DNA of 64,000 nucleotides from NCBI RefSeq assembly GCF_006345805.1, contig NC_043006.1, positions 55,552,001-55,616,000 on the forward strand, written 5' to 3'. A program made the translations under genes and the position numbers. Source of the stretch: Octopus sinensis. Taxonomy: Eukaryota. This document shows positions 7,620 to 64,000 of the stretch, piece after piece; position 1 is the first letter of the stretch; every line of letters starts with the position of its first letter. The notes below the pieces were generated by a model. It was not told the origin of the DNA and did not search any database. It saw nothing but the letters and a program-made list of their open reading frames with translations.

Positions 7620-9830
7620 TTATTCAGGCAGTGTTTGGTTAGTGTCTTTCTATGGATTGCTGGGATGGTAGTTCCGGTGATTTTAGTATTGTTTTATTTT
7701 ATCCAGGTTTGGCTGGTATTTTCGAATTAGGTATTTTCCCTTAGCCTTACGAAAATGTTCATTTTCTGTTCATAGTTTGAAGAAAGGGAATATTTTGAAT
7801 TTTCTTTTCCCACATTTGCAAGTTGTGTTTCTAACGGAAGGGTCATGGTTTTGTTGTTTATGTACCCTTAATCTCTTATATAGTTCAATGTCAGTTTTAC
7901 TAATGTAGTATTCTTTGTATTCGGGGCATTGGCACAGTAAATTAGGTTTCTGGATTTGCAATTCATATTTCCATTTATTTTTAGAATGTTGCTGTCTTTA
8001 AAAGTAATTTCTTCTTCTTCGTCACCGTAATCACATGTTCCAGAACGAGGGTCACCACATTTTTGAACTCTCTTTGTTGTTCTCTAGTTGTAAATCTTGT
8101 TTGAGTTAAGAGCTTTTCTTTAGGTTGGGTGCTTCACGTCTGAATCTGTTATTAAAATTGTTCATTTATGATGATTGTTGAAGTACTGGAGACACTTTTT
8201 GCGATATTGATGATGTCGTGATTTCTTGGGTTGGGTGTGATGACAAAAGGAGTGCTTATGAGTCTGTATTTTTATTATTGTATGTCTGTTTTCCTCTGAC
8301 GTCTGTAGTTGGGATGTTTTTCGCCTGGTAATTGCTGGATCAATTAATCTAGTGGGATACTTTTAATTCTTGTAATCTTTTATCCCCTAATTCTGCATCT
8401 TTTACCATAGCGCAAATTCATATCGCCATATTAATGGGTATGTTTCTTTTAATATGTGAGGGATGGGAGTAACGTAAGTTCAAATATTGGTGTGTCTCTG
8501 TAGGTTTGTGGAAGAGATCTGTTTTTATGGTGTCATCTTCTTTAATTAGAAGTATGTCTAAAAATGCTAATTCCTTTGTGTGCTGTTCCATACTGAATTT
8601 CATTGAGGTATGTAAATTATTTGAAAGTGAGTGAAAGATTCCTAAGTCTTGTTGCCTTTTGGTACAAAATATAAAACTGTCATCCAAATATCGTTTCCAA
8701 TTTTTTTAATATAAATCGAGAATTGTTCGTTAAATGTCTCTGTTCGTTGGAAACAGAGTTTGACCTCTAAGAAGCCCATTACGAGTATTGCGAAAGTGGG
8801 GGATAGCTTTTCCCCCATCACCATCCCTTTCATTTGTAAGTAGAAGTTGTTGAAGAAGAAATGATTATTTCCCAGTATTAATTCTAATCCTTCTAAAATG
8901 AAAGTGTTTGAGAATCTTTCCATGATATGATTCGGGTGCAGAAATTTATAGCTTCAATTCCTGGGTCGTGTAGGATATTGGTGTAAAGACTAGTTACATC
9001 GAAGCTAACAAGAATTGTCTCCTGGTGGACACTTTTAGGTATGTAGTTTAAAAAGTCCATATCGTCCCGGACAAATCTTGGTGTAATGTTGCATAAAGGT
9101 TTTAAAACTATATGTATTAAGATGCTGGTTCTGCAATGATTGCGTGTAATTTCAGGTCTCTGGTTGAATTGTTTCCTTTTATTTTGTCTTTCTTTTGATT
9201 TATGGATCTTAGGTAATCCATAGAAATTACTGGTTTTTACTTCAAAATTGGTTAAATAATTAACTTCATTCCCAGTTAGGTTATTACGATATTTTAAGAC
9301 CAATCCATGTTTCTCGCTCATGGCCTTTTTATCTTCGTTTTGGTTTAGCTTCTTGTGGAAGTGTTGGCCATTAAGTTGTTCCCTAAACATATATCTGTAA
9401 TGGTCCTTGTCCATGATAACTATTGCTCCACCTTTGTCAGCTTCTTTGAAAATTATCGATGAATCTCTTTGCAAATTTGTTAAAGCTTCCAACTGATCTT
9501 TAGATAAGTTGGGTTTACATTTCCTCTCTGTCAAAAGATCGTTGTAGGTAGCTAATATATTCTTCTAACTTTTAGTCTCTGTATAAGGGAGGTCTGAACC
9601 CTGTTCTGTTTTTAACCAGTGATTTGTCTGTGTATCCAGTATTTAAAAAAAATTCTCTCAGTCGTAATTTCCGTCAAAATTATTCTGTCTTTTATGAGTT
9701 CAGCTTCGTTGGGTTTTGGAGTGGGTGTAAATTTCAATCTATTTTCCAGAAGTTTAATTTCTTCTTTAGATAATTTCTTAGTGGATAAATTTAGTATTTC
9801 CGTTTTGCTTGTGCTTTTGTTTTCTAATGT
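7620..9830 (-). mobile_element. Penelope-like element body, decayed (N-terminal domain, RT, GIY-YIG)
   Basis: ILNLSTKKLS..LKFTPTP, IIFKEADKGGAIVIMD, FYGLPKIHK, LVSFDVTSLYTNI, YLQMKGMVMG.KLSPTFA, W.RYLDDSF, FLDI, TDLFHKPT.THQYL, CPEYKEYYISKT..L..RLRVH; several frameshifts. Confidence 0.92.
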
Positions 9831-15932: not shown

Positions 15933-18900
15933 ATAAAGAAGGAAGAGAGAGGAAAGAAAGATCCCAGAGCGGGCAACAGGGAAAGAGAAAAAAGACGACT
16001 GTGTTTTACGAGTGCACATGGTGAAAGGCGGATGTTTACGAAACAGAGCAAAGTGGGTTTTTAAGGCAAAAGAGTGGAGACAAGGTTGGTAACGACAACA
16101 GATGTGTGTGTATGTGTGTGTGTGAGGCGAGATGAAAAAACAAAAAATATATAGTGTGTGTTAGTGTGTGCGTCTGTGTGTAGGCGTTGTGAGTAGGGCG
16201 AGATAGTGGTCAGCTTAGCAGACAAAGGTCAGTAGTAAGAAAAAGAAGAGGAGGAAGGGAGGGACGGGAAGGGAGGGAGGGGGAAGGGGTGGGGGCGTAT
16301 GTAGCGCGCCAGCGTGTGTTGAGTAGTAGTGTGTGTGGTGTGTCCAGTGTCGTGGTGGTATTAATGGCGAGTAGATTGAATGTGTGTAAGAGTAATGTAT
16401 ATATTTAAGCAATGTGTGTATATGTGTGCGCGCGGTGGTAACGAAAAAGGGGGGGGGTTAAGGAAAAAGGACTCCAGCTGAGGGGAAGATGGAAGAGTGG
16501 TCCCGCGGAGACGGGCGTGGGAAAACCCAACGACACGCGACGGTCCCAGGAACGGGCGGGAGGTCTTGTCGGGTCCAAGAGCGAGGTGCCTGCGGCGCGT
16601 ATGCGTGCGCGAACCGGCGCAAGCGCGTGCGTGCGCGACGCTGCGAGTATGTGCGTAAGTATGTATGTGTGTGGATGTGTGAGTGTGTCTGTGTGTATGT
16701 CGGGTGGCAGTGTGTCCGATGAATGTATGTGAGTATGTGTGTATGTATGTGTGTGCATAGATGTATGTCCGTGTTGTCCGTGTGTGTGTGTGTGTGTATG
16801 TGTGTGAGTGTGTATGTATGTACGTGTGGGTGTGGGGAAGTGTGTGTATGTGCATGTGTGTGCGCACATACAGGTGTGTGTGAGTGGTGTGTGTGTGTAT
16901 GTATGTGTGAGTGTGTATGTATGTGTGTGTAGGATGCATGTATGTGTATGGGTGTATGTATGCGTGTGTGTATGTATGTATGTGTACGTGCGTGTGTGTG
17001 TGTGTATGCGTGTAGGTGTGCGCGTGTGCATGCATGCATGCATGCATGCATGCATGTGCGTAGGTGTGTGTGTGTGTGCATGTGTGTGGGTATTATGTAT
17101 GTGCGTATATGTGTGTGTATGTGCGTACATGTGTGTGTGTGGTATGCATGTGTGTGTATGTAGGTGTGTAGGGGCGTGTGTGTATAGGTGTATGTATGTA
17201 AGTATGTATGGGTGTGTCCGTGTATGTGTGGTATGTATGTGTGTGTATGTAGGTGTGGGGGGTGTGTATATGTGTGTGTATGTAGGTGTGTGGGCGTGTG
17301 TATATAGGTGTATGTGTGTATGTCTGGGTGTGTCCGTGCATTTGTGTGTGTGTGTGTATGCATGTGTATGTAGGTGTGTGTGTACGTGTGTAATGTATGT
17401 GTGTATGCGTGTGATGCGTGCGTGCGTGCGTGTGTGTATGTAGGTGCGTGTGTATGTGTTGTGGGAGTGTAGGTGTGTGTGTGCGTGTGCGTGTGCGTGT
17501 TTATGTTGGTGTGTGTGCGTATGTGAGTGTGAGTGTATGGGTGTTTGTCATGCATGTGTGTGCGCGTGCAGGTGAGGTGAGTGTGTGTGTAAGTATGTGA
17601 GGTGAGGTGTTGTGTGTAAGTATGTGTGTGTGTATGTTTGTGTGAGTGTGTATGTGTGTATGTCTGTGTGTGTTGTATGTGCGTAAGGAGTATGTGGGTA
17701 TGTGTGTGTGTATGTATATGGGTGTATGTATGTATGTGTGTGTGTGTGCATGTGTATAAGTATATGTGTGTGTGCGTATGTGTGTATATGTGTATGTGTG
17801 TGTGTGTTTATGTATGTGTGTATGTATGTGTGTAGGCGTGGTGTGTAGAGATGTATGTAGGGTGTGTGTGTCCGTGTGTGTTTGTGTGTGTGTGTAGGTA
17901 GATGTGTGTGTCTGAGTGAGGGTATGGCTGTGTAGGTGTGTGTGTGTATGAATGTAAGTGTGTGTGTGTACAAGTGTAATGTATGTATGTAGGTGTGTGT
18001 GTGTGTATGTGTACGTGTGCGTGTATGTGTGTATGCGTGTGTATGTGTGTGTGTGTGTATGCGGGTGAGTGTGAGTGTATGGGTGTATGTCTGTGTGTGT
18101 GTATGTCTGAAGTAGGTATGTATGTGTATGTATGATGTGTGTGGGTGTGTGCAGGTATGTGTGTGTATGTGTGTGTGTGAGTAGGTGTGCGTGTATGTAT
18201 GTGGGTAGGGATGCATGCGAGTGTGTGGTATGTATGCATACATACGCACGCGCACATCCGAAGCAAGCCCACACACACGAAGCGCGCTCACGCACACAAC
18301 GCACAAGCAGTACAACGCAAGCCCAAGGGCCGACCAAGCCCCCAGCGCGCGCCAAGGCGCGCGAGAGCGCAAAGGCCCTCGAACGCCCCGCTACGCGGGA
18401 CCGAGGATCCATCAGCCAAAACCGGAAAGCAGAAAAGAGGGGGGCTGCCTGGATGCAAAAAGGTGTATGTGTGTGTGCATTCAGAGTGTAAGGGTGTGCA
18501 TGTGTAGGTTGTATGTATGTATGTGCCTACATGTATGTTTGCATGTGTGTGTGTGAAGTATGTAGTGCGGCGGTGTGTGTGTGTGGGTTGTGTGTATGTA
18601 TGTGTATGGTGATGTTGTGTTGATGTGTGTATGGTGTATGGGTGTGGTGTGTGTGTGTGTGTGTGTAAGTATGTATGGGTGTGCGTATGTATGTATGTGT
18701 GTGTGTATGTGATGTTGGTTTGTATGTTAGTGTGTGTTAGTATGTCGTAAGTGTGAAATGTGATTTAATGTGTGAATGTATGTACGTAGATGGGTCTTAT
18801 CGTATGTGATGTGTGTGACAGGCGTGTGGGAGGGTAGGTGGTGGGGTGGGTGTGGGAGGTATGTGGGTGGTGTGTGCGTGTGGGAGGCAGGTGGGTGGTG

Positions 18901-18954
18901 TGGGTGGGGTGTGGGTGGTGTGTCACAAAACAAAAAAAAAAAACAACGATCTCA

Positions 18955-21733
18955 AGAGGAGGGGGCTGTGTTAAGTCCGTGTGGGGTGGTAGTTTGTAGG
19001 TGTGAAGATGTAGCGTTGCTCCAAGTGGAGCCGGAAAGTGGGCGACCATGGTGGGGGGCGAGACCAAACACTGAGATGTCATCTAGGGAATGGCCGGCCG
19101 AGCGGAAGTGGCGTGCGACTGGAGAAAGAGAGTGTAGGCGAACGTCCCTCAAGTGTTCAGTGAAACGGGTCGGACAACCGCGTCCCGTCTGTCCTACATA
19201 CAGCATCCCGCATAGTTTTGCATTTAATGCGTAAATAAGGCCAGACGAGGTGCACGTGAAAGAGTGCCTAATGCGTACAGTGTGCAGGCTGAGCCGGTGA
19301 CAGCGGTGGTGTTGGTGATGAAGGGGCAAGTGTTTGCAGCGGGATCTAGAGCAAGGGAATGATCCGTTTGGGGCTGAGGGGAAGGATGAGAGGGTGCTGT
19401 GGACCAGGGGAGGTCACGCAGATTGCGGGCTCGTTTGAAAGAGGACAGGGGTAGGTTAGGGAAAATGGGGCGGGTGGTGGGATCAAGCTGGAGGCGACGG
19501 AAGGCACGTAGTATCTTGCGACGAAGGGGTAGGGTAGAGGGTGGAAAAGGAGGGGGAAGGGGTTGCGGTTGGGGGGTGGCCGGGGGGAAGAGACAGGGCG
19601 GTAGTGCGGTCGATGCGACGGGCGCGGTTGAGGGCATCAGAGAGGATATAAATGGTGAGATCCTGGTCGCGGCTGCACAAACGTCGGAGGCGGAGGAACT
19701 GGGAGTAGGGCTGGCTCGTTTGTGTGTGAAGGGGTGGGAGGAAGAGAATTGAGATAGATGTGGGAATCCGTAGTTTTAAAAAAGGCGGTGGTGGTGAGAG
19801 AGCTGGAGGGGTGATCGATGCGGAGAGAGATGTCCAGGAAGTTGACAGAGGTGTTGGAGATGGTGGAGGTGAATTGAAGAGAGGGGTGAAAGTTGGAAAG
19901 GAAAGAGATTAATTGGCAGAGAAGTTCACGGGAAAGGGAGGTGCACCTACGCAGTCGTCGATATAAGCGACCGTATAGTTTCGGGGGTCGGCCCAGAGAA
20001 CTGGAGAACACTTGGGCCTCAATGTAGCCAAGAAAGAGATTGGCGAAATTGGGCCCATCCTAGTTCCCATCGCGACCCCGGGACACCTGTTGGTACGTTT
20101 CCTCCGGCGAACGTGAAGCAATTGAGGTGAGGACGAGCTCAGCCAAACGGAGAAGGTGGGGGTGCTGGGGGGTGGGTCGGGACGACGGTCGAGGAAGTGT
20201 TGGAGGGCTAGGAGACCGTCATTGTGGGGAATCACTGTGTACAGGGATTTTTACATCTAAGTGAAGAGGAGGTGTGAGGGTCTGGAAGGGAAGGAAAAGG
20301 AATTGAAGAGACGGAGGGCGTGGTTGGTGTCGTGTATGTGGGATGGGAGGGCTGCGACTAAGGGGGACAGGATGCGGTCGAGTATAGGGAGATGAGTTTC
20401 AGTGGGGCAATTACAGGCAGAGACTATGGGACGGCCAGGATTAGAGGGTTTATGGATCTTGGGAGGAAGTAGATGGTGGAGGTGCGGGGTGTGCGGACGA
20501 TGAGGTTGGGTGGCGGTGAGGGTGAGAGCGGAGGAGGAGATGAGGTCGTGGATGGTGGAGGACACTCGCTGTTGGTAGGAGGAGGTGGGATCGGAGGGGA
20601 GGAGGCGATAGAAGAGTGGATTTTGAAGCTGGTGAGCGCTTCCTCCCTGTATAGGTCCGCGCGCCACACTACCACTGGCCCCGCCTTTGTCCGCCGGTTT
20701 GATGACAATGTCATCACACGACGGCGGAGGTGGCGAAGGGCAATGGATTCGGCCCGAGTGAGGTTGGCTCGGCGGGGTCTGGTGCAAAGTTGAAACGGTG
20801 GACCAAAGCGTTTGCAGTCATGTACAAACGAATCTAGGCTACTGAAAAGGCCTGGGGGCGGCGTCCAGATGGATGGACGAAGCCCCAGCTCCAAAGGCAA
20901 TCCTGATTGTTGTTGACGCTGCGGGGACGCGTGGTATTATGCGCGAAGTTTGAGGCGGCGCCAGGAACAGGTTGACGTCCGCCCGAGTCCTCGAACTCAT
21001 CACAGTGGCGCGTGAGTGGCGTGAAGCGGAGACCCTTACTGAGGAGGGAGCGCTCAGCGGCTAGAGGGGGAGGTGGGGGGTATAGTGACAACGCGCGAGG
21101 AAGCGGGGTGGTGGGAGGACTAGGGGCAGGCGGAGGGGGTGCAGGGGTGTGAAGGGAGGGTAGGAGTGGTTGGGTGAAGATGGGTTAGGCGTAGGAAGGT
21201 CACGGTGGGGGGTGTGTGGGTCCGTGAAAGGGTGGGGTAGGTGCGAAGGAGGGGGAACAGTGGGGGAGGATGGAAGGGGGTGAGGGTTGAGGAGGAGGTG
21301 GAGTTTTTGTTTTTTGTGTGTGTGAGGTGGTTGTAGAGTTGGTGGTTGAGATTAAGAATGAAGCGGAGGATAGGTTGGGTGAAGAGTGGGGGTAGAGGGC
21401 GGAGAGAAGGAGGTAGCCTGGGAGTTGATGGTCGAGGGAGTCAAGGAGGGGCGGGTGGAGCGGATGGTGACGCGGAGGAGGGAGCGGGAGGTACGAGCGA
21501 GGTGGGTTCGACGAAGGGGGAGGAATAGGGGTAGCGTGGAACTTCAAGAGACCCGCGGGGTTGACATGATGGCGGAGGCACCGGCTAAGAAAGGAAAGAT
21601 GACTCGAGTGGCGGGTTTTCTTAAAAGCAAGCCGGAAAGTTTTATAGCAGGTGCGGAACATTGTGGGGGAAGAACGCGAATAGCGGCTGAGGAGGGATTG
21701 AAGGTGTTGGACGAACGAGTGCAAGTCAGGCAT
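18955..21733 (-). pseudogene. Penelope RT-GIY-YIG polyprotein, frameshifted as assembled
   Basis: RHSSHLSFLSRC, LLSKGLRFTP, IVIKPADKGG, LPKIHKPSNPGRPIVS, LF..DVK.LYTVIPH, GVAMGTRMGP, YIDDCVG, SVNFLDI, FTCTSSGLIYA...LYVGQTGR, PVARHF, HGLN, spread over many frames. Confidence 0.9.
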
Positions 21734-22667
21734 GATGAGAAGTGTGGCAAACAGGTAAAGGTGGGTGTGGTCGAAACAGGAAAAGGGAGACAACAGGAAA
21801 ACAACGAAAGAAAAAAGGGTGAAGACGGTTTGAAAACAAGAAAAAGTTTGAAAAAAAGTTGAAAAAAGTCAGGAAAAGATTTGAGAGTCAACGGACAGAT
21901 TAGGTAATGATTTTCAATCACGGTAATGGCGGTACTCCGGAGAAGGTTGCGGGTGATCCGTAGGTCAGGAAGAATGGTAACAATAATCCGTAGGTGCAAA
22001 AAATCCGGGTTGGTATCCAGGTACAAGGGTCCGTGTAGGCGCGCAGTGGTATAATTTTAATCCAAACGGGAAACAAAAAAACAACAACAATGGAACAATT
22101 ACAGTATTATTATTAATAGGCGCTCAGGAAATGGAAGCAGGGAGTATGACGTTTCGAGCGGAGCTCTTCGTCGGAAACATAAAAAGGAAGAGAGAGGAAG
22201 AAAAGATCCCAGAGCGGGCAACAGGGAAAGAGAAAAAGACGACTGGTGTTTACGAGTTGCACATGGTGAAAGGCGGATGTTTACGAAAACAGAGCAAAGT
22301 GGGTTTTTAAAGGCAAAAGAGTGGAGATAAGGTTGGTAACGCAACAGATGTTGTGTATGTGTGAGTGTGTGCGTGTGCGTGTGTGTATGTGTGTGTGTGA
22401 GGCGAGATGAAAAAACACAAAAATATATATGTGTGTGTTAGTGTGTGCGTCTGTGTGTAGGCGTGTGAGGTAGGGCGAGACTAGCGGTCAGCTTAGCAGA
22501 CAAGGTCAGTAGTAAGAAAAAGAAGGAAGGAGGAAGGGAGGGAGGGGAAGGGGTGGGGGCGTATGTAGCGTGCCAGCGTGTGTTGATAGTAGTGTGTGTG
22601 TGTGTCCAGTGTCGTGGTGGTATTAATGGCGAGTAGATTGAATGTGTGTAAGAGTAATATACATATG

Positions 22668-36512: not shown

Positions 36513-39500
36513 TGACGCCGGTCAAAGCAAGTGTTTTCGTGACCTACAGAAGTTTCTGAGTACGTCACATTCCCTAGTTTTGTTAGGAGACTTTAACACA
36601 ATCTGTGGCTCGAGAACAGATAATAACATTGGCCTCTGGGAACTGCTAAGTCGTTTTCAGCTAGCAGATCCATATAGGATGGAACACCCGAACGCTCCAT
36701 TGTGGACATGGTCAACTGGCGACGGGTAGTTCAGGTCGTACATAGATTTAGATAAAATTTTAATTAGGAAAGCTGATAAGAACATAGCTAAGAGTCCAAA
36801 GTTTTATCCGGTCAGCTACAGTGATCATAAGTTGGTCACTTGTGAGTTGAACCTAGATAAAGTATATAGACTAGGATCTGGTTACTGGAAACTCAATACG
36901 TCCCTTTTGGCGATTGAGGAGTACAGAAAGCGGATTAAGTTGTTGATACAGAGGGCGTTAACAGGAGCCATCATTAATAATAAATGGTGGTGTGCCCTCA
37001 AACTAACCATTTGATTAGAGTCTATTAGATATAGCATAGGTTTAGTGGCTAGTGAACGTAGGCAGGAACGAGGTTTAGTTAAGGCAATAGAGGAAACCAC
37101 GAGGACTCGCAGTGCAACCCAGGTAAAGGCGAAGAGACTGGAACTAAACCAGCTCCTCGAAGCCAAGCACATGGGGTGCATTGTCAGGGCTAGACTACGT
37201 GCAGTGAGTTGCAAGGGAAACAAGGTCGCTGGATGGGCCCGAGTGGTGGAAGCCCAGCGTAGAAATGATTCCACAGTACGAGCTTTGGTGAATCATCAAG
37301 GATAAACGAACCCAAGAAGATGTGTGAGGCCTTCCAGGAGCACTTCGCCCAGCTTTTCGAGGGAAGCGATAGACCGGACAGTAGGAGGGACCTAGCAAAT
37401 TTCTTCGCCGGGCTGCCGCGCCTCTCGGGGCGGCATGAAGAGTCTTGTGAAGGGCTGATCACACATGAGGAAGTAATTGAGGCTATAGCAGACTATGGCG
37501 TAAGTAAGTCACCGGAACTGGATGGTCTGCCCTACGAGTTGTATAGAAGTATGCCAGACTTGTTCGAGCACCTGCTGGCCAGTGTGTACACGAACTGGCA
37601 ACAAATGGGTTTATTCCCAATTCTGTGCGCCGGGGAGTGGTGACACTGATCAGAAAGGACCTGGAAAGAGGGATTGTTTAGATAATTTCCGGCCCATCAC
37701 TTTGATTAGCACAGAGTCGAAGATTTTAGCCAAGGAGCTTACAAAAAGGTTGGCGCGTGTAGCAGATGGTCTGATTGGGGAGGCAGAGATTTATGCCATC
37801 TCCGGCAGAAGCATTCGGGACAATCTCCACCTTCTACGCTACACCTTAGAGGAGTTTGAAAGTTGTGGCAAGGGTGGGACAGTGGTTCATTTAGACCAAG
37901 CTAAGGCATTCGATAGGGCTGACCATCATTACCTGGTATGTGTTCTTGCACAGTTCGGCCTGGGTCTTGGCTTCATTAGGTTGATAATTCAATTGTATGA
38001 TAACATCGACTCGATCGTTCGGGTGTACGGTTTTCTGTTCAAAGCGTTCTGTTTCAAACGCTCGGTTCGTCAAGGGTCTTCCCTCGCACCGCTATTGTAC
38101 GCGATAGCTCTTGAACAGTTACTGCGACAGTTGAGTGGCATCTCGAGAGGGCCAGGCAGTGGAGATACGGTTTCAGCTAATGCGGATGACATCACCATCA
38201 TCGTGAGCAAAATAGAACACATACAGAAGGTATACGAGGCCATTGAGGTCTGCGAGACGGTGCCAGGAACAAAGATTAATCGGGATAAGTTAGTCGGCTT
38301 GCAACTCAGCACCTGGAGGGGTACCTCGATGCCTCCAGACAGCGTCGTGGGACGTTGGACGGAAGGCCCTGTTAAGTTTCTAGGCGTCTGATTTGGGCCA
38401 CATCTCCAGGTAGAAAAGAACTGGGCTGAGGTTTCGAGCAGGGTGAACAACATAGTCAGGACCTGGTCCGGGCGGTGGCTATCCCCGAAAGGGCTGGCTA
38501 AGGTGGCCAATGTGTTTATCGCATCGGTCATCACTTACCGCCTAACCGTCGTGGTTGAACAAATTGGAAAGACAGCTCTTTTGCTTTTTGTGGAAGGGCT
38601 CGAAACCACTTGTGAGACGTTCTATCTGCTGTCAAAAACCGTTAAAGGGAGAGCTAAGGATGCCTTGACTGTTGGTGCGTTGAGGCTGAGGCATCTTTGG
38701 CTCCTCCTGGATAGTGAACTGATGTGGTCTCCGCTGGCGAAACAGATGTATCCTACGTTCACTAGTTTCGGTGGACGGGAAACCTGGTGCTATCGAAGAT
38801 CTAAGTTGGATATATGGCGTTTGGAGTGCCGTAAGGCACTCCTGCTATTCCGTCACTCGGGCAATGCCAGCCGCGGTGGTTCAAAAGCATTTTTCTATAG
38901 TGGTTTGGTAGAGGCTAAATGTGACGATTCCTTGGGTTTTGGAGCGAACCTGGGTCTCAAGGATAATCAACTAGACAGTCTGTTCCAACGTACTTTGGGG
39001 CCGAAGACACTGGATAATTTCCAAAGGTCTTTGACCTAGCAGTGTTACCGAGGAGCCTTGACCGTTCAGGATAAGCTCGCAAGACACGGTCAAAGCGATC
39101 TGTCCAAGATGCGGGCAGGAAAGAGAAACCATCCTGCACGCTATTGTTCTGTGCTCGGGGTGTCTGAGGTGTGGGCTTATACTGAATATCTGTTACAGTA
39201 AGAGTACAGCTTTCGTCTGAGTCAATTTTAAAAATTGACCTACCTGATTTCTTGACGAAAGAAGGTAAGCATTGTTTTCTCATAGTAGTTGCAATCGCGA
39301 TCTGGCCTCGATCTACAAGGATATTTCGCTTTTCATTTGAAAAAGAAAGTGAGGCTGGAGAGAAGATGCCTGTCAGAGAAAATGTTTAATCATAGATGGA
39401 AGTATGTGGTACGAATGTTGTATATGAGTGTAACCACGTGAACATGACAAAGGTCTACCAACGTTATCAGTGGTGGATTGGGACTGGTGGGTTCAAGAGC

Positions 39501-42178: not shown

Positions 42179-42233
<55 letters not shown>

Positions 42234-42244
42234 TTATTCTTTTA

Positions 42245-44270
42245 TTGTTTAACTAGTTTCAGCCAGAGGCTGGGGTCACACTGGAGCACCGCCTTTCAGT
42301 GTTTTGGAGTTTCCTTTCGGTACTGTTTTTGGTGAAGAAGCGAATTGGACGAAGCTGCTCTTCTCTCTGCCTCCTGCCGCGATGTGGGCTCATCTGGATT
42401 TCATTTAGAAATTTCTTCTGGTGCTTCTTGAAGGTTTCCCCATCTACAACATGCAGATCTCTTAGGTTCCTTGGCAGGATGTAAAGCAGTTTTGCTTCCT
42501 TGAAACTCAAGCCGTAACAATACTGGGTCCTTATCTGAGATGAAGAAGACAATATCTTTCGTATTATGCAGTGCCATCCAAATTTGGGAGCTACACCTTC
42601 CAGGCTCTTCCATATGTATATTACTGCATACCTTTCTCGCCTTCTCTCCAAGGAGTAGAGCTTCAGTTCTTCTAGGCTCTCCCAGTAGCTCATCTGTTTC
42701 ACTGAGTCAATCCTCTTTGTGTAGTGGCGCTGGATTGCCTCGAGTTCCGCCAGCAATTTGACGCTCTGCGGCGACCGCAATTGGGAGCAGTAATCCAAAC
42801 GAGTGAGGACAAATGTCCTCCAAAGGAGTATCAAGGTATCCTTATTTCTGGTTCTTGAATGATATAAGGATCCATCCAACTACTCTCCTGCACAGTATTA
42901 CCATCCTGACAATATGCACATGGAATATTGGATCACTACTTATGTACCAATTCTAACTCTGGAATTGCACTGCTCCCTGGTCCTATGTATTCCGATTGTA
43001 GTCTGTGGGCCGATAACGGAGTGTTTGAAACTAATCAGCATTGAACTGCATGCTATTTTCATCATCTCATTTATTTATTGCATGCAGGTCATTTTGCAGC
43101 TTTACTACGTGATCAGGACTCTTGACGGCCTGAGACTCTTTTGTATTATCAGCGTAGCTGGTGAGAGTGACTGACCGTACGACTGACGGTATGCCAGAGA
43201 GAATCACAAACAGAGGTTGTTCCAGTATAGTTCCCTGACGAACTCCACTGCGGATTGATGTCTCCCCAGAGAGATCATCATTGGTTGCGACTGCCTGACT
43301 TCTATCCTTTCTATCCTTTAAAAAGTCGTGCAGCCACTCTCAGTTTTCCAGTGATACCAAGGTCGCGTCGTTTGTATATATCGTCTCATGATCAATTTTA
43401 TCAAAAGCTTTGGCAAAGTCGAAATATATTACATCCACATCTGAGTGGTTGAGCTGTTGTTTCAGTATCCAATCATAATGTTGTAGTAGCTGTCTGAGAC
43501 TGCTCCTCCCTAGGCGAGAAACCATGTTATGTGTTTGTGAGCAAGTTATACTCTTCCAGAAACGTGATCATTCTCCTTCCGACAATGCGTTCCATGATCT
43601 TGCTACCATGTGAATTTAGAGAGACAGACCTGTAATTATTAGTATCTGCTCTGCTTCCTTCTTTATGGACAGGGCATATGATACTCTTTTAACAGTTTGG
43701 GAAGTTCTCCACATGCAAGGGCACTCTGAAAAGTATCTGTAGTGGTTTTGCGAGAGCTTTCTTGCATGTTTTTAGGAGATCAACCGGAAATCTATCCGAA
43801 TCTGTTGTTGAGTTTGAGCTCGTCTCATCAATGGCTGATATTACATCTTCCTCCTTCATATCGATGTAATCGATGGCTGCCTTTTTCCCATGTAGGTCTG
43901 CAGTATTGAAGAACTCTTTAGGCTCGCCTACTTGCTAGTTTCCCAGTAGAGAGGTGAAGACATTCTGGAGTTGCTTATTTAGTACTTCACCTATCTTGTA
44001 TTGCACTGAGGTACACTCTTTCGCGGACTTGTAAAAGGCACGAACTTATAGAATATTTATATTAATATTTTCCACTGCCTTGGTTTCTCTTTCTATCCTT
44101 TCCTATTCATTGAGTAGTCTCATTTTATTTCCGATCTCTAAAAGTTTCTCTTCTAGGAGGGATTTCTCGCTGTCAATGACTTCTCTATTTAAGCGATTAG
44201 AGCTCTTTATTCTCTGTCTCATAAGGACTCTTCTGTTTCTTTTACAAAGAGTAGGGTTTATGTTAATGAA
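42245..44270 (-). mobile_element. CR1-type LINE ORF2 3' half, decayed and internally deleted
   Basis: NYRSVSL, DVIYFDFAKAFDKIDH, TFVLTRLDYCSQL, LEELKLYSLERRRERY; 3' tail ggcggtgctccag...gctgaaactagt abutting (TA)n. Confidence 0.9.
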
Positions 44271-60816: not shown

Positions 60817-62043
60817 ATGGCTAACTTGTAGGCCTGCAACAGACGAAATTGGTCTGATAACGAAATTGATGTTTTAATAAACACATGGTTCTCTCTTTCC
60901 CAAACAGAAAATCTAAATGTCTTGTGTTTGAATGAGATTGCCGAAAAAACATCACAAGTGGTCAACACACGATCCGTCAAACAGATTCGTAGCAAGCTGA
61001 AACATATCGAAGTATCTTTCAAACTGATAAGAGGCCATTATGAAAAGCTTCTACATATTTTCACAGTTCAAGAACACCAACAGCTAGAAAATCAGCAGCC
61101 ACAACAACAACAACAACAGAATGAGCCACTCCTGGTTCCCAGCACAATGGCTGACCCTAACATCGGTCAAGCACAACAACAACAACAACAGCCACAGCAA
61201 CAAGAACAACAACAGCCACTCCTCAACTCTAGCTTACTAGATGATTCACTAAATGCCAGTATCTTTTCACCGCTCTCACAGCAACCACCACAATTATCAT
61301 CATCATCATCACCACCGCTGCCACCATCGTCTTCTATCACCAAAAATACCAACAGAAAACCAAATAAGAAACCACTGCCCTCTTCCCCCATATCACCACC
61401 TCAATACTACTGCAGTAACAAAAACTTAAAGAAACATAGGAAGCAGAATGCGCCCCCCACGGCACAAACAAGAAATCCCCAAATATGCCGCTATTCACTG
61501 CGCCAGAGACTCTGCACAAATAGTGACTGCATCTTCACGCATCTACCCGGCACTAGACGCACTACCGGCCAAGGCCAAAGCACGCATCCCACAATAACAT
61601 CAACACCACCAAATAGTAAATCGAAATTCAAAACACACACAACTCGGAGTCCCAAAATCTGCCGGTATTCCCAACGTGAGAGAACATGTCTACTGAGTGA
61701 CTGTTCCTTCACTCATCTTCCAGGGACCCGACGCACAAACAGAAACGGGGCCTCAAGCCAACACACAAACCTGAATAACAATAAAAATAGAAACACACCA
61801 TGCTGCAGTAATGCTGGTCCAGTCTTTTCAGGAAGACACAAAAACAACAACAAAAGTGGAAACTACAACCCTATCCAACAGTGCAACCACACCTCCAGCC
61901 AAAAACTGCTCCCTAAGCAGGAAAATTCTTTTTTAGCCATGTTGAACATGGCAAAAGAGATACACAAAAACATTCTAGCCATCACTCAACACCATCCTAT
62001 GCTATTACCCCAGTGCACCAATTCCCCACATTGCTGCCACTAA
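60817..62043 (+). CDS. LINE ORF1: Myb/SANT-like N-terminus, polyQ, Ser/Pro-rich linker, two C-x8-C-x4-C-x3-H fingers; in-frame TAG at codon 5
   Basis: ATG 60817, TAG 60829-60831, then open to TAA 62041-62043. RRNWSDNEIDVLINTW..EIAEK..RSVKQIRSKLKHI; fingers at 61486-61542 and 61660-61716. Confidence 0.75.
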
Positions 62044-64000
62044 CACACACAAAAAATCCAAGCCCCCTGCAACAGTCAAAACCAGCCACTACACTAACCT
62101 CCACATTCCTACTCAATGCACAAGGTGTCAGCCCTTCCATCAATGCACAAAAATGGAAGGTCCAATTCATTGAAGACTGGGTTGGTAACCATTCACACCA
62201 CATCCCTTTCTTCATTCTCACTGAGACCCACCTTGACAACCCCCACTTGGAAGCCGAAGTGAGAGTGAAGAATTTCACAACCATCCGCGCGGATCGTATC
62301 GGCAGGAGGAAGGGTGGAACTGCCATTTTCCTGCATGATTCATTTACGGCAGATGGAAATAGTATATTCTCCAACGGCTACTGTGAATCAGTCACCGTGC
62401 ACAACAAAGCCAATGACCTGACAGTAATTGGACTCTATAGGCCGCCCCAAACACCCATACTGTGCTTTAAAGAATGCCTCAACAGCATTAAGTGCTTTAT
62501 TCAACAGTGCCATTCTAGCAACATACTCATGATGGGAGACTTCAATCTACCCTGTGTTGACTGGACTACAAACTGTTTGAAACCAAGCACTCCCGCCTCA
62601 ACCGCTGACAAAGAAGCAGCAGAGTCACTTTTCGACTTTACGAATGAGTTTTTCTTGTCCCAACTTGTCCTTGCACCAACAAGACATCAGAACATTTTGG
62701 ACCTAGTGTTTAGTAACCACACTAACACTATACATAACGTTACAGTGGAAAAAACCCTTCTTTCAGACCATGACATGGTTCTCTGTAACATGAAATTCCA
62801 CCAGCCGAAAGCTAATCCTAGTGACCTTCCTCCAGCCCACCCATTTGACAACATGGATCTCCATAAAGCCAACTGGGATGCAATCAGGAACGAGCTATCA
62901 AATGTTGACTGGTCCTTTACACATACACACATCTCCACCAACCATAAAACATCTTGGCAGATCTTTGTAGACACCGTCACAGACATATGTGCAAAACACT
63001 CCCCACCAAGACCTGTGAACAAAAAGTGCAGAATCCCCCAAAACAGAAAAACCATTATCAGAAAAATAAAAAGAACAAACAAAAAAATTAACAAACTAAA
63101 GTACTGCCAACAGCAACACACACATTCGACGGCTATCGCACTGCTTGAATCCAAAAAATATAACCTCCAACAATGCATGAAGACCCTCATCAATAACCAA
63201 AGATCAGCTGAGGAGAAGTGGGCCATTGAAAAAATCAAACTCAACCCCAAAGTGTTCTTTTCATTTGCGAGGAAACGCAGGGTCACTGTCTCCACTGTAG
63301 GCCCTCTAATTGACGAAACTGGCACTCTCCAAGATAATGCCAAATCCATGGCCGAGATACTGCAGAAACAATACTGCTCTGTTTTCAGCAATCCTGATAT
63401 GGCCGATCTGGGCTGTATCAGTGATGTCAACCCCCAACACACTATATCGGACATAACGTTTAGTGCCCCTGATGTCTTAGCGGCGATAAACGAAATAAAA
63501 CACAATTCAGCAGTAGGCCCCGATAGGTTCCCTGCTTGTGTCCTGAAGGTGTGTCGACACCAACTTGCATCTCCCCTTGCTAATCTGTGGAGAAACTCAC
63601 TGGATGCTGGCTATATTCCAAAAAACCTTCTGTCCCAGTCTGTTGTCCCAGTTTTCAAAAAGGGAAACAAGTCCCTTGCAGTGAACTACCGTCCGATCTC
63701 ACTCACCTCTCATATCATCAAGGTATTTGAGAGGGTGGTGAGATCTCGAATAACCCAATTTCTGGAAAGCAACAGACGGCTGATCTCCAACCAACATGGG
63801 TTCCGTAATGGAAGGGACTGCCTAACGCAGCTCCTGCATCACTTTGAGGACATTTTAAGAGCTTTGGGAGAGGGCTCCAACACCGATGTCATCTACCTTG
63901 AATACAGTAAGGCCTTCGACAGGGTCGATCACAAGATCCTATTGAAAAAACTATCCAACATTGGTGTCTCTGGAAAGTTACTGAAATGGATTAAGTGTTT
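61917..64000 (+). CDS. CR1-type LINE ORF2 (APE endonuclease + RT), uninterrupted to the window end; absent from the ORF track
   Basis: Translated codon by codon with no stop: LLNAQG, ILTETHL, RADR..RKGGTAI, GLYRPP, MGDFNLP, PTR..NILDLV, SDHD, SAVGPDRFP, VVPVFKKG, NYRPISLTSHIIKVFE, NQHGFR, DVIYLEYSKAFDRVDH. Confidence 0.95.

What the first reader, a model, noticed from the sequence alone, without database searches (positions are those of the whole stretch)
60817..62043. LINE ORF1 with unusual architecture: Myb/SANT-like domain + polyQ + duplicated CCCH fingers
Seen: W-x-x-x-E-x-x-x-L-I-x-x-W ... EIAEK ... RS-x-x-QI-x-x-K at 60841-61010, two Q-rich tracts, and two near-identical C-x8-C-x4-C-x3-H-LPGTRR units. 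Known: the usual ORF1 types in CR1/L2/Jockey elements are RRM+CCHC, PHD, esterase or coiled-coil; trihelix Myb/SANT domains are typical of PIF/Harbinger accessory proteins and host factors. Inference: a DNA-binding module was captured by a LINE ORF1, possibly for targeting or transcriptional control, with CCCH fingers binding RNA and polyQ promoting RNP condensation. I recall CCCH-type fingers in some invertebrate CR1 ORF1s, so the Myb-like part is the more novel element.
Basis: partly seen in the sequence, partly recalled or inferred. Interest (0 to 1): 0.7.

Follow-up and report, generated by a model that had tools for sequence, protein, structure and literature searches.

The report
LINE ORF1 with Myb-like head
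A nearly intact jumping gene (a CR1-like LINE, apparently from an octopus-type genome) encodes a first protein whose usual PHD-like front domain is replaced by a Myb/SANT-like domain. This layout recurs in related elements elsewhere, so it is a real, selected, apparently undescribed variant of LINE ORF1 and not an accident of this copy.

Summary
From ATG 60817 to TAA 62043 there is one reading frame, broken only by a TAG at codon 5. It encodes a Myb/SANT-like head (Pfam Myb_DNA-bind_4: 28.8 bits for the excised domain, cut-off 27), a Q/S/P-rich linker with two (CAA)n-encoded Q tracts, two C-x8-C-x4-C-x3-H-LPGTRR units, and a C-terminal amphipathic helix. An APE+RT ORF2 follows in the -1 frame.

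The head belongs to the element. The same layout occurs in three independent, diverged loci (L006, L008, L009), two of which continue into ORF2. Between the window and L009 the head shows saturated synonymous change but conserved protein (pS 0.80, pN 0.26).

More distant relatives (ORF2 34-43% identical) share the CCCH finger and the C-terminal helix. In place of the Myb-like head they carry a C4HC3 (PHD-like) head with no detectable similarity to it, so the head was swapped. The Myb-type ORF1 also sits in front of a much more distant ORF2 (L006), which points to ORF1 exchange between LINE lineages.

The fold is not confirmed: both AlphaFold models were low-confidence and Foldseek found nothing. 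Function (RNA packaging by the CCCH fingers, DNA or chromatin contact by the head) is inferred. I found no description of this ORF1 type. Verdict: a new variant of a known kind, of moderate interest.

The parts
60817..60831 (+). Probable ORF1 start codon (ATG 60817) followed by an in-frame TAG at 60829-60831. This is the only defect in this copy's ORF1.
   Evidence: In L006 the homologous ORF starts with ATG 14 codons before the conserved NW, against 10 codons in the window.
60841..61071 (+). Myb/SANT-like head domain. The Pfam match covers 60841-61035; the block conserved in relatives runs to about 61071.
   Evidence: Myb_DNA-bind_4 scores 24.8 bits in the whole ORF, 28.8 bits (cut-off 27) for the excised domain with 4 of 5 family members matching and best E 5e-8, and 34 bits for the family consensus. 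N6 W7 E11 R47 Q51 I52 K55 I59 H69 are invariant in 5 sequences. pS 0.80 and pN 0.26 against L009. AlphaFold predicts helices at residues 9-24, 30-46, 49-68 and 70-83, with pLDDT 66.
61072..61470 (+). Low-complexity Q/S/P-rich linker with two (CAA)n-encoded Q tracts (61078-61119 and 61168-61215).
   Evidence: (64% Q+S+P+N+T). A Q tract follows the head in L006, L007, L008 and L009 as well.
61486..61560 (+). CCCH unit 1: C-x8-C-x4-C-x3-H-LPGTRR.
   Evidence: There is a weak zf-CCCH_2 match for the pair of units (E 0.0027, 18.6 bits, below the cut-off of 25.8).
61660..61734 (+). CCCH unit 2. It is homologous to the last CCCH finger of the PHD-like-type ORF1s.
   Evidence: the four ligands C4, C13, C18 and H22 are invariant in 8 sequences that are 15-52% identical. 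pN 0.19 and pS 0.71 against L009.
61735..61905 (+). Basic N/K-rich spacer with a conserved TPCC..AG motif (61798-61818).
61924..62043 (+). C-terminal amphipathic helix (NSFLAMLNMAKEIHKNILAI, 61924-61983), tail ending in Cys-Cys-His, and stop codon TAA 62041-62043.
   Evidence: An equivalent segment (xxFLxLxxxV...) and a near-terminal Cys are present in all 8 aligned ORF1s. pN 0.22 and pS 0.57 against L009.
61917..64000 (+). ORF2 (APE endonuclease plus reverse transcriptase). Its frame is -1 relative to ORF1, is open from 61917 (a 127-nt overlap with ORF1), has no ATG before 62529, and runs off the end of the window.
   Evidence: tblastn identity is 62-70% to L009, 52.6% to Argonauta hians L001, 43% to L002 and 31% (RT only) to L006.

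Best explanation
The window holds the 5' two-thirds of a young, nearly intact CR1-like (Jockey-superfamily) LINE of an octopod-type genome. Its ORF1 protein is modular. It has a Myb/SANT-like helical head, a disordered Q/S/P-rich linker, two tandem CCCH zinc fingers, a basic spacer, and a C-terminal amphipathic helix.

Shown here:
- The head is an integral part of the element and has been kept by purifying selection.
- The CCCH finger and the C-terminal helix are shared with a wider family of invertebrate CR1-like ORF1s.
- That wider family carries a C4HC3 (PHD-like) head instead, unrelated in sequence to the Myb-like head. The head was therefore exchanged.
- The Myb-type ORF1 also occurs in front of a distantly related ORF2, so whole ORF1 modules move between LINE lineages.

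Inferred:
- As in other LINEs, ORF1p coats the element's own RNA. The CCCH fingers would bind single-stranded RNA and the C-terminal helix would drive oligomerisation.
- The head does the job that the PHD-like head does in relatives. It would connect the RNP to DNA or chromatin (nuclear retention, choice of target region, or binding the element's own promoter).
- ORF2 is probably reached by -1 frameshifting or reinitiation in the 127-nt overlap.
For: Domain content:
- Pfam Myb_DNA-bind_4: E 2.9e-5 in the whole ORF; 28.8 bits against a cut-off of 27 for the excised domain, with 4 of 5 homologues matching; family consensus 34 bits, E 3.9e-8.
- The invariant R-x3-Q-I-x2-K-x3-I block fits the third-helix signature R-[ST]-x2-Q-C-x2-K-W-x2-L of Myb/SANT-like domains. 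That signature is from my own knowledge.

The head is part of the element:
- L006 has head, QQQQQ, one CCCH unit, helix and then ORF2.
- L009 has head, polyQ, two CCCH units, helix and then ORF2.
- L008 has head, two CCCH units and helix.
- Window versus L009, head: pS 0.80, pN 0.26.

Head swap:
- L002, L012, L013, L014, P0090 and P0093 have a helical N-terminus, C4HC3, three CCCH fingers and the helix.
- The eight C4HC3 ligands are invariant.
- hhalign of the Myb head against that N-terminal half gives probability 0.07%.
- The CCCH ligands are invariant across both ORF1 types.

Exchange between lineages:
- Window versus L006, ORF1: 40% identity in the head and 52% in the CCCH-to-C-terminus segment.
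- Window versus L006, ORF2: only 31%, and only over 229 residues of the RT.
- The ORF2 of L006 is nearest to P0080, P0076 and P0079. The P0076 locus has a coiled-coil+RRM-looking (L1-like) ORF1, read by eye and not tested by Pfam.

Framing:
- The same -1 overlap of ORF1 and ORF2 is seen in the window, L002 and L006.
Against: - The fold is not confirmed. The AlphaFold2 models had only 4 sequences, pLDDT 66 and 63, and no Foldseek PDB match with E below 2.
- A profile search of PDB sequences gave only weak GCN4-like coiled-coil matches (E 0.02-0.2).
- The third and fourth helices carry a regular 3-4 hydrophobic spacing, which would also suit a coiled coil.
- Only the first Trp of the classical aromatic triad is invariant.
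- In the context of the whole ORF the Pfam score is below the curated cut-off.
- The CCCH units do not reach any Pfam cut-off.
- The PHD label for the relatives rests on the C4HC3 pattern. The Pfam PHD match is only E 0.2.
- All related loci are decayed copies on short contigs of unknown species. L006 could in principle be a misassembly.
- The Argonauta copy lacks the head, probably through 5' truncation.
- No functional data exist.
Confidence: 0.7

Rival explanations
1. The N-terminal head is not a Myb/SANT fold. It would be a helical oligomerisation (coiled-coil) region, like the coiled coil of L1 ORF1p, that happens to give a marginal Pfam match.
For: PDB profile hits are only GCN4-type coiled coils (E 0.02-0.2). 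Residues I52, L56, I59, F63, I66, Y70, L73 and F77 follow a 3-4 spacing (read). Both models are long helices of low confidence with no Foldseek match. The whole-ORF Pfam score is below the cut-off.
Against: Four of five diverged homologues independently match the same Pfam family, and the consensus reaches 34 bits. The next-best family is classical Myb_DNA-binding. The match spans profile positions 1-71 of 89, including the N-terminal W...E...L helix, not only the heptad-like part. ORF1 already has a separate conserved C-terminal helix.
Confidence: 0.15
2. The head is a true Myb/SANT-like domain, but it works as a protein- or histone-binding SANT module, or regulates the element's own transcription or a host factor. 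It would not act in target-DNA choice.
For: It replaces a C4HC3 (PHD-like) head. PHD fingers are typically histone-tail readers (established knowledge). The head has only a modest net charge (11 K+R against 8 D+E, pI 9.1). No shared insertion-site motif is visible. The flanking (TA)n tracts are too common in this genome to be informative: 18.5% of positions have such a tract within 320 bp upstream.
Against: Nothing direct. This is a variant of the best explanation and differs only in the ligand of the head.
Confidence: 0.25
3. The Myb-like region is unrelated flanking DNA or a host exon that lies in frame upstream of a 5'-truncated LINE by chance.
For: This copy has a stop at codon 5. Upstream of about 60780 the window does not align with L009. 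The Argonauta copy lacks the head.
Against: The same head is joined to the same downstream ORF1 parts in L006, L008 and L009, which come from different samples. The coding DNA of the head aligns between the window and L009 and shows purifying selection. The frame is continuous for 403 codons.
Confidence: 0.02

Closest known systems
Type III (PHD-containing) ORF1 of CR1/L2 LINEs (Khazina & Weichenrieder classification as used by Metcalfe & Casane 2014, PMC4120745; Kapitonov & Jurka 2003 from memory)
   Same: It is an ORF1 upstream of an APE+RT ORF2 of the Jockey superfamily. Direct relatives of this element (ORF2 34-43% identical) have a C4HC3 head and share the last CCCH finger and the C-terminal helix with the window's ORF1. 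Modular, reticulate ORF1 evolution is the pattern described in PMC4120745.
   Different: The window's ORF1 has no C4HC3 module. A Myb/SANT-like domain sits in that position, with no detectable similarity to it. The domain catalogue of PMC4120745 (CCHC, RRM, CTD, coiled coil, esterase, PHD, zf/lz) contains neither Myb/SANT nor CCCH.
R2 retrotransposon N-terminal zinc-finger + Myb DNA-binding domains (e.g. PMC11204384)
   Same: A non-LTR retrotransposon protein that combines zinc fingers with a Myb-type domain. In R2, ZF1 and Myb confer target-site DNA binding (section headings and abstract).
   Different: R2 has a single ORF with an RLE endonuclease. Its Myb and C2H2 fingers lie in the RT protein itself and it is site-specific for 28S rDNA. 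Here the domain is in a separate ORF1 of an APE-type LINE, the fingers are CCCH (an RNA-binding class), the Pfam family is Myb_DNA-bind_4 rather than classical Myb, and no site specificity is shown.
Myb/SANT-like (trihelix) accessory proteins of PIF/Harbinger DNA transposons and the host Myb_DNA-bind_4 / MADF families (own knowledge)
   Same: The same Pfam-level domain family, used by a mobile element as a separate DNA-binding partner of the catalytic protein.
   Different: A different class of element (DNA transposon against LINE). phmmer found no sequence relative from those sources among 1.84 billion representative proteins, so descent from them is not shown.
L1-type ORF1p (coiled coil + RRM + CTD, Transposase_22)
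   Same: Probably the same overall job: an oligomeric, RNA-binding, disordered-region-containing partner of ORF2p encoded upstream on a bicistronic RNA. An ORF1 that looks like this type by eye is present in L010, a relative of L006's ORF2.
   Different: No RRM, CTD or Transposase_22 match was found in the window's ORF1. RNA binding would be by CCCH fingers.

Membership tests
Pfam PF13837 Myb_DNA-bind_4 (Myb/SANT-like DNA-binding domain) | Score at or above the curated gathering cut-off (27 bits) against the family HMM | tested here: met
   The excised domain scores 28.8 bits, E 1.7e-6. Four of five homologues match, best E 5e-8. The family consensus scores 34 bits. Caveat: within the whole 403-residue ORF the score is 24.8 bits, below the cut-off.
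Pfam PF13837 Myb_DNA-bind_4 (Myb/SANT-like DNA-binding domain) | Three-helix bundle (helix-turn-helix) fold | tested here: inconclusive
   AlphaFold2 predicts helices in the expected order (residues 9-24, 30-46, 49-68, plus 70-83), but pLDDT is 66 and 63. Foldseek against the PDB gives no match with E below 2.
Pfam PF13837 Myb_DNA-bind_4 (Myb/SANT-like DNA-binding domain) | Regularly spaced aromatic (Trp) core residues and the R-x2/3-Q-C-x2-K-W third-helix signature | tested here: inconclusive
   The first Trp (W7) and R47, Q51, I52 and K55 are invariant. The third-helix Trp is replaced by Leu or Ile, and the second-helix Trp is absent.
Pfam PF13837 Myb_DNA-bind_4 (Myb/SANT-like DNA-binding domain) | Binds DNA | not testable with these tools
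   Needs EMSA or SELEX with the purified domain.
CCCH-type zinc finger | Ligand pattern C-x7-8-C-x4-5-C-x3-H with conserved ligands | tested here: met
   There are two units of C-x8-C-x4-C-x3-H. The four ligands are invariant in 8 ORF1 homologues that are 15-52% identical.
CCCH-type zinc finger | Pfam zf-CCCH family score at or above the cut-off | tested here: not met
   The best match is zf-CCCH_2 at 18.6 bits against 25.8 (E 0.0027) for the window's pair of units. Relative P0089 gives zf-CCCH_2 E 3.9e-4 and zf-CCCH E 0.0029. All are below the cut-offs.
APE-type LINE of the Jockey superfamily (CR1/L2/Jockey) | ORF2 with an N-terminal AP-like endonuclease and a reverse transcriptase | tested here: met
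   Exo_endo_phos_2 E 1.7e-15 and RVT_1 E 5.3e-12. There are 84 homologues with the same domains.
APE-type LINE of the Jockey superfamily (CR1/L2/Jockey) | Placement of the RT in the CR1, L2 or Jockey lineage by phylogeny with reference elements | not tested
   No Repbase or Dfam reference set was available. 'CR1-like' rests on the Pfam Exo_endo_phos_2 domain and on relatives with a C4HC3-type ORF1.
APE-type LINE of the Jockey superfamily (CR1/L2/Jockey) | Characteristic 3' end (short-repeat tail) and target-site duplication | not testable with these tools
   The element runs off the window at 64000. In the Argonauta relative the 3' UTR ends at a (TA)n tract.
Known ORF1 types I-IV (RRM+CCHC; coiled coil+RRM+CTD; PHD; esterase) | Presence of the defining domain of any one type | tested here: not met
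   Pfam finds no RRM, CCHC, Transposase_22, PHD or esterase/lipase match in the window's ORF1 at E up to 10. No C4HC3 pattern is present in the sequence.

The most novel reading that the evidence does not exclude
A LINE lineage has moved DNA recognition into ORF1p. A sequence-specific Myb/SANT-like head, exchanged as a cassette between LINE clades (and possibly shared with a piggyBac transposase, see L007), would steer the RNP to particular DNA such as the abundant microsatellites of cephalopod genomes. That would be ORF1p-directed target choice in an APE-type LINE.
Probability: 0.1. Interest if true: 0.75.

Novelty: new variant of a known kind. Interest (0 to 1): 0.5.

Why it matters
ORF1 proteins are the least understood part of LINEs, and the published catalogue of their domains is short. 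This case shows a clean replacement of one chromatin- or DNA-facing head (C4HC3, PHD-like) by another (Myb/SANT-like) on a conserved CCCH-plus-helix chassis. The same ORF1 also appears on two distant ORF2 backbones. Together these extend the 'modular, reticulate ORF1' picture with a new module.

It also gives a natural experiment on what the N-terminal head of ORF1p does. If the head binds DNA, it would be a way for APE-type LINEs to bias insertion through ORF1p. Cephalopod genomes are very rich in LINEs, and a nearly intact copy with a known domain plan is a useful starting point for studying their activity.

Tried and rejected
1. Word-indexed protein search with ORF1 found no hits. The exhaustive phmmer search then found 9.
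2. Other copies in the window: none. Only two unrelated LINE fragments turned up.
3. Structure route: two AlphaFold2 jobs (window head; P0086) and two Foldseek PDB searches gave low confidence and no matches.
4. PDB sequence-profile search gave only weak coiled-coil matches.
5. A profile search with the head alignment found only the three proteins already known.
6. Scans of metagenome contigs and viral contigs for ORF1 relatives found nothing.
7. Target-site idea: (TA)n tracts flank several copies. They are so common (53 tracts of 8 or more units in 64 kb; 18.5% of positions have one within 320 bp upstream) that the association is not significant with these few copies.
8. 5' end of the element: the window and L009 do not align upstream of about 60780, so the 5' UTR and boundary remain undefined.
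9. Species of the external contigs: the run and sample accessions were not found in the paper library.
10. Pfam support for 'PHD' in relatives is only E 0.2, so I call it C4HC3 / PHD-like.
11. Literature searches for Myb, SANT or CCCH in LINE ORF1 found nothing relevant. This is a limited negative, because Repbase and Dfam were not searchable.

Full report
**1. What is in the sequence.** From 60817 the + strand reads ATG GCT AAC TTG TAG, and the frame then stays open for 403 codons to TAA at 62041-62043.
- NWSDNEIDVLINTW at 60847-60888.
- EIAEK at 60934-60948.
- RSVKQIRSK at 60970-60996.
- Two Q tracts at 61078-61119 and 61168-61215.
- Two C-x8-C-x4-C-x3-H-LPGTRR units at 61486-61560 and 61660-61734.

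A degenerate DNA pattern for the unit matches exactly these two places in 64 kb, with none expected from shuffles. The units are 68% identical in DNA and 174 bp apart, so the duplication is old.

Immediately downstream, in the -1 frame, a second ORF is open from 61917 to the end of the window. It has no ATG before 62529. It carries Exo_endo_phos_2 (E 1.7e-15) and RVT_1 (E 5.3e-12). This is therefore the 5' part of an APE-type LINE. Its only visible defect is the TAG at codon 5 of ORF1, so the copy is young. No second copy lies in the window.

**2. Is the head Myb/SANT-like?**
- In the whole ORF, Pfam gives Myb_DNA-bind_4 at E 2.9e-5 and 24.8 bits, just under the 27-bit cut-off.
- The excised 84-residue head scores 28.8 bits.
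- Four of five homologous heads match the same family independently (best E 5e-8), and classical Myb_DNA-binding is the weak runner-up.
- A majority consensus of the five heads scores 34 bits, E 3.9e-8.
- The invariant residues of the family (N6 W7 E11 Q24 R47 Q51 I52 K55 I59 H69) include the W...E first-helix motif. They also include an R-x3-Q-I-x2-K-x3-I block that corresponds to the third-helix signature of Myb/SANT-like domains (own knowledge).

Structural confirmation failed. Only four sequences could be used for the alignment, and the two AlphaFold2 models had pLDDT 66 and 63. They show the expected succession of helices plus a fourth, but Foldseek against the PDB returned nothing with E below 2. 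A PDB sequence-profile search gave only weak GCN4-like hits. The third and fourth helices have a regular 3-4 hydrophobic spacing. I therefore keep a coiled-coil reading as a minor rival (0.15).

**3. Is the head part of the element?** Yes. An exhaustive phmmer search of 1.84 billion representative proteins found nine relatives. Three match the head, two match the CCCH-to-C-terminus part, and four are longer proteins of a wider family. Their contigs show the following:
- L006 has ATG, head, QQQQQ, then (after a frameshift) one CCCH unit, the TPCC..AG motif, the helix NSFLDMLNLVKEIQRSIL and PQCCH-stop. An APE+RT ORF2 follows directly.
- L009 has head, polyQ, an S/P-rich stretch, CCCH unit 1 (partly deleted), CCCH unit 2, the helix, and an ORF2 that is 62-70% identical to the window's.
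- L008 has head, a Q-rich stretch, two CCCH units and the helix.

Between the window and L009, the 75 head codons have pS 0.80 (saturated) and pN 0.26. The CCCH unit gives pS 0.71 and pN 0.19, and the C-terminus gives pS 0.57 and pN 0.22. All three parts, the head included, therefore evolved as protein.

**4. The wider family and the head swap.** ORF2 homologues are numerous (84 at E up to 1e-10). The nearest named one is from Argonauta hians at 52% identity, which fits an octopod source. The Argonauta copy has two CCCH units, the helix and a (CAA)n tract. It lacks the head and is probably 5'-truncated.

Six more distant ORF1s all share one plan: those of L002, L012, L013 and L014, whose ORF2s are 34-43% identical to the window's, and the proteins P0090 and P0093, found through ORF1 similarity. 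The plan is a helical N-terminus, a C4HC3 (PHD-like) module, three CCCH fingers and a C-terminal helix.
- The last finger (LCTNSDCTFxHLKGTRRK) and the helix align with the window's ORF1. The four zinc ligands and a near-terminal Cys are invariant in eight sequences.
- The eight C4HC3 ligands are invariant in six sequences. Pfam PHD reaches only E 0.2, so 'PHD-like' rests on the pattern.
- hhalign of the Myb-like heads against that whole N-terminal half finds nothing (probability 0.07%).

The octopod-type ORF1 thus keeps the CCCH-plus-helix chassis, with its last finger duplicated, and has a different, unrelated head.

**5. ORF1 exchange between lineages.** The ORF1 of L006 resembles the window's more than its ORF2 does:
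- ORF1: 40% identity in the head and 52% from the CCCH unit to the C-terminus.
- ORF2: 31% identity over 229 RT residues only.

The ORF2 of L006 is closest to P0080, P0076 and P0079 (32-33%), which are among the window's most distant hits. The P0076 locus has an ORF1 that looks like the coiled-coil+RRM (L1) type by eye; I did not test this by Pfam. The ORF2 of L006 appears complete at its N-terminus and starts right after the ORF1 stop, in the same -1 arrangement, which argues against a random nested insertion. This matches the reticulate ORF1 evolution described for the Jockey superfamily (PMC4120745). Misassembly of that short-read contig cannot be excluded.

**6. How it most likely works (inferred).** By analogy with other ORF1 proteins, ORF1p coats the LINE RNA.
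- The two basic CCCH units (pI above 10) belong to a class of single-stranded-RNA-binding fingers.
- The conserved C-terminal amphipathic helix is the candidate oligomerisation element.
- The linkers are 58-68% Q/S/P/N/T and are likely disordered.
- The head occupies the position of a PHD-like module. It probably performs the equivalent task of contacting DNA or chromatin, for nuclear retention, target-region bias or binding the element's own 5' end.

The Q tracts are (CAA)n repeats. In the Argonauta copy the same repeat reads poly-N in the frame of the fingers and polyQ in another frame. What is conserved is a low-complexity linker, and a specific role for glutamine is not supported. No insertion-site preference can be claimed. 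(TA)n tracts adjoin several copies, but they are extremely common here.

**7. Comparison with known systems and novelty.**
- The published ORF1 domain catalogue for CR1/L2/Jockey (CCHC, RRM, CTD, coiled coil, esterase, PHD, zf/lz) contains neither Myb/SANT nor CCCH (PMC4120745).
- The octopus LINE study PMC9115989 describes RTE and Dong elements only.
- Searches for Myb, SANT or CCCH in LINE ORF1 found nothing relevant.
- Myb domains are known in non-LTR elements, but in the single RT protein of R2, where ZF1 and Myb bind the 28S target (PMC11204384).
- Myb/SANT-like partners are known for PIF/Harbinger DNA transposons (own knowledge).

This is therefore a new variant of a known kind: a CR1-like LINE whose ORF1 carries a Myb/SANT-like head on a CCCH chassis. 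Repbase and Dfam could not be searched, so prior description there is possible.

**8. Verdict.**
- Observation: confirmed.
- Interpretation: partly supported. The architecture and its membership in the element hold, the fold is unconfirmed, and the functions are untested.
- Confidence in the best explanation: 0.7.
- Interest: 0.5.

Noticed in passing
L007:1-1273 (Logan SRR11869391): A decayed Myb-like head plus polyQ (P0087) is followed, about 35 codons later and in the same frame, by a piggyBac transposase core (DDE_Tnp_1_7, E 1.4e-10). DNA similarity to the LINE-type locus L008 ends at about position 465, just before the piggyBac part. It could be a rearrangement or nested insertion, an assembly chimera, or a piggyBac transposase that uses the same head.
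   Followed up: partly
window 61917-62529: ORF2 overlaps the end of ORF1 by 127 nt in the -1 frame and has no ATG before 62529 (residue 162). The same -1 overlap is seen in L002 (there with an ATG) and in L006. This suggests frameshifting or reinitiation for ORF2 expression.
   Followed up: partly
window 60829-60831: A single in-frame TAG at codon 5 is the only break in ORF1. ORF2 is open for all 651 codons visible. The copy looks recently inactivated, or the family is still active.
   Followed up: no
window 42259-44162 (-) and 42183-42228: A second, different CR1-like LINE fragment (30-46% identical to the RT part of the window's ORF2, with a C-terminal ...YSLERRRERY motif). Its 3' end abuts a (TA)23 tract. 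The Argonauta relative's 3' UTR also ends at (TA)n (L001:9028-9101). The (TA)n may be the tail of these elements, or simply reflect how common it is in the genome.
   Followed up: partly
window 37522-39039 (+) and 8893-9534 (-): Further reverse-transcriptase-like ORF fragments from other retroelements. The first is 28% identical to the window's RT. The second has an ...FDVTSLYTNI... motif.
   Followed up: no
window 16400-22000: A 1.5-kb imperfect (TG)n/(TGTA)n array at 16662-18203 is followed by an unusually GC-rich (0.53-0.56), strongly G-skewed stretch up to about 22 kb. The rest of the window is about 25-45% GC.
   Followed up: partly
whole window: Microsatellite density is very high: 53 (TA)n tracts of 8 or more units in 64 kb. 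The 3 kb upstream of the element (57.8-60.5 kb) is mostly (TA)n and (CA)n.
   Followed up: yes
alignment A6 (window 62029-62040; L001, L002, L006, L009, P0089, P0090, P0093): All eight aligned ORF1 proteins of both head types (the A6 alignment) end with a Cys within the last three residues (…CCH, …SC, …FC, …QC). It is an invariant column of unknown meaning.
   Followed up: no
L001:9101-9485 (Argonauta hians): A roughly 380-bp insert sits inside a (TA)n tract and is bounded by the repeated word AAAAGAAGT. It looks like a small element inserted next to the LINE's 3' end.
   Followed up: no
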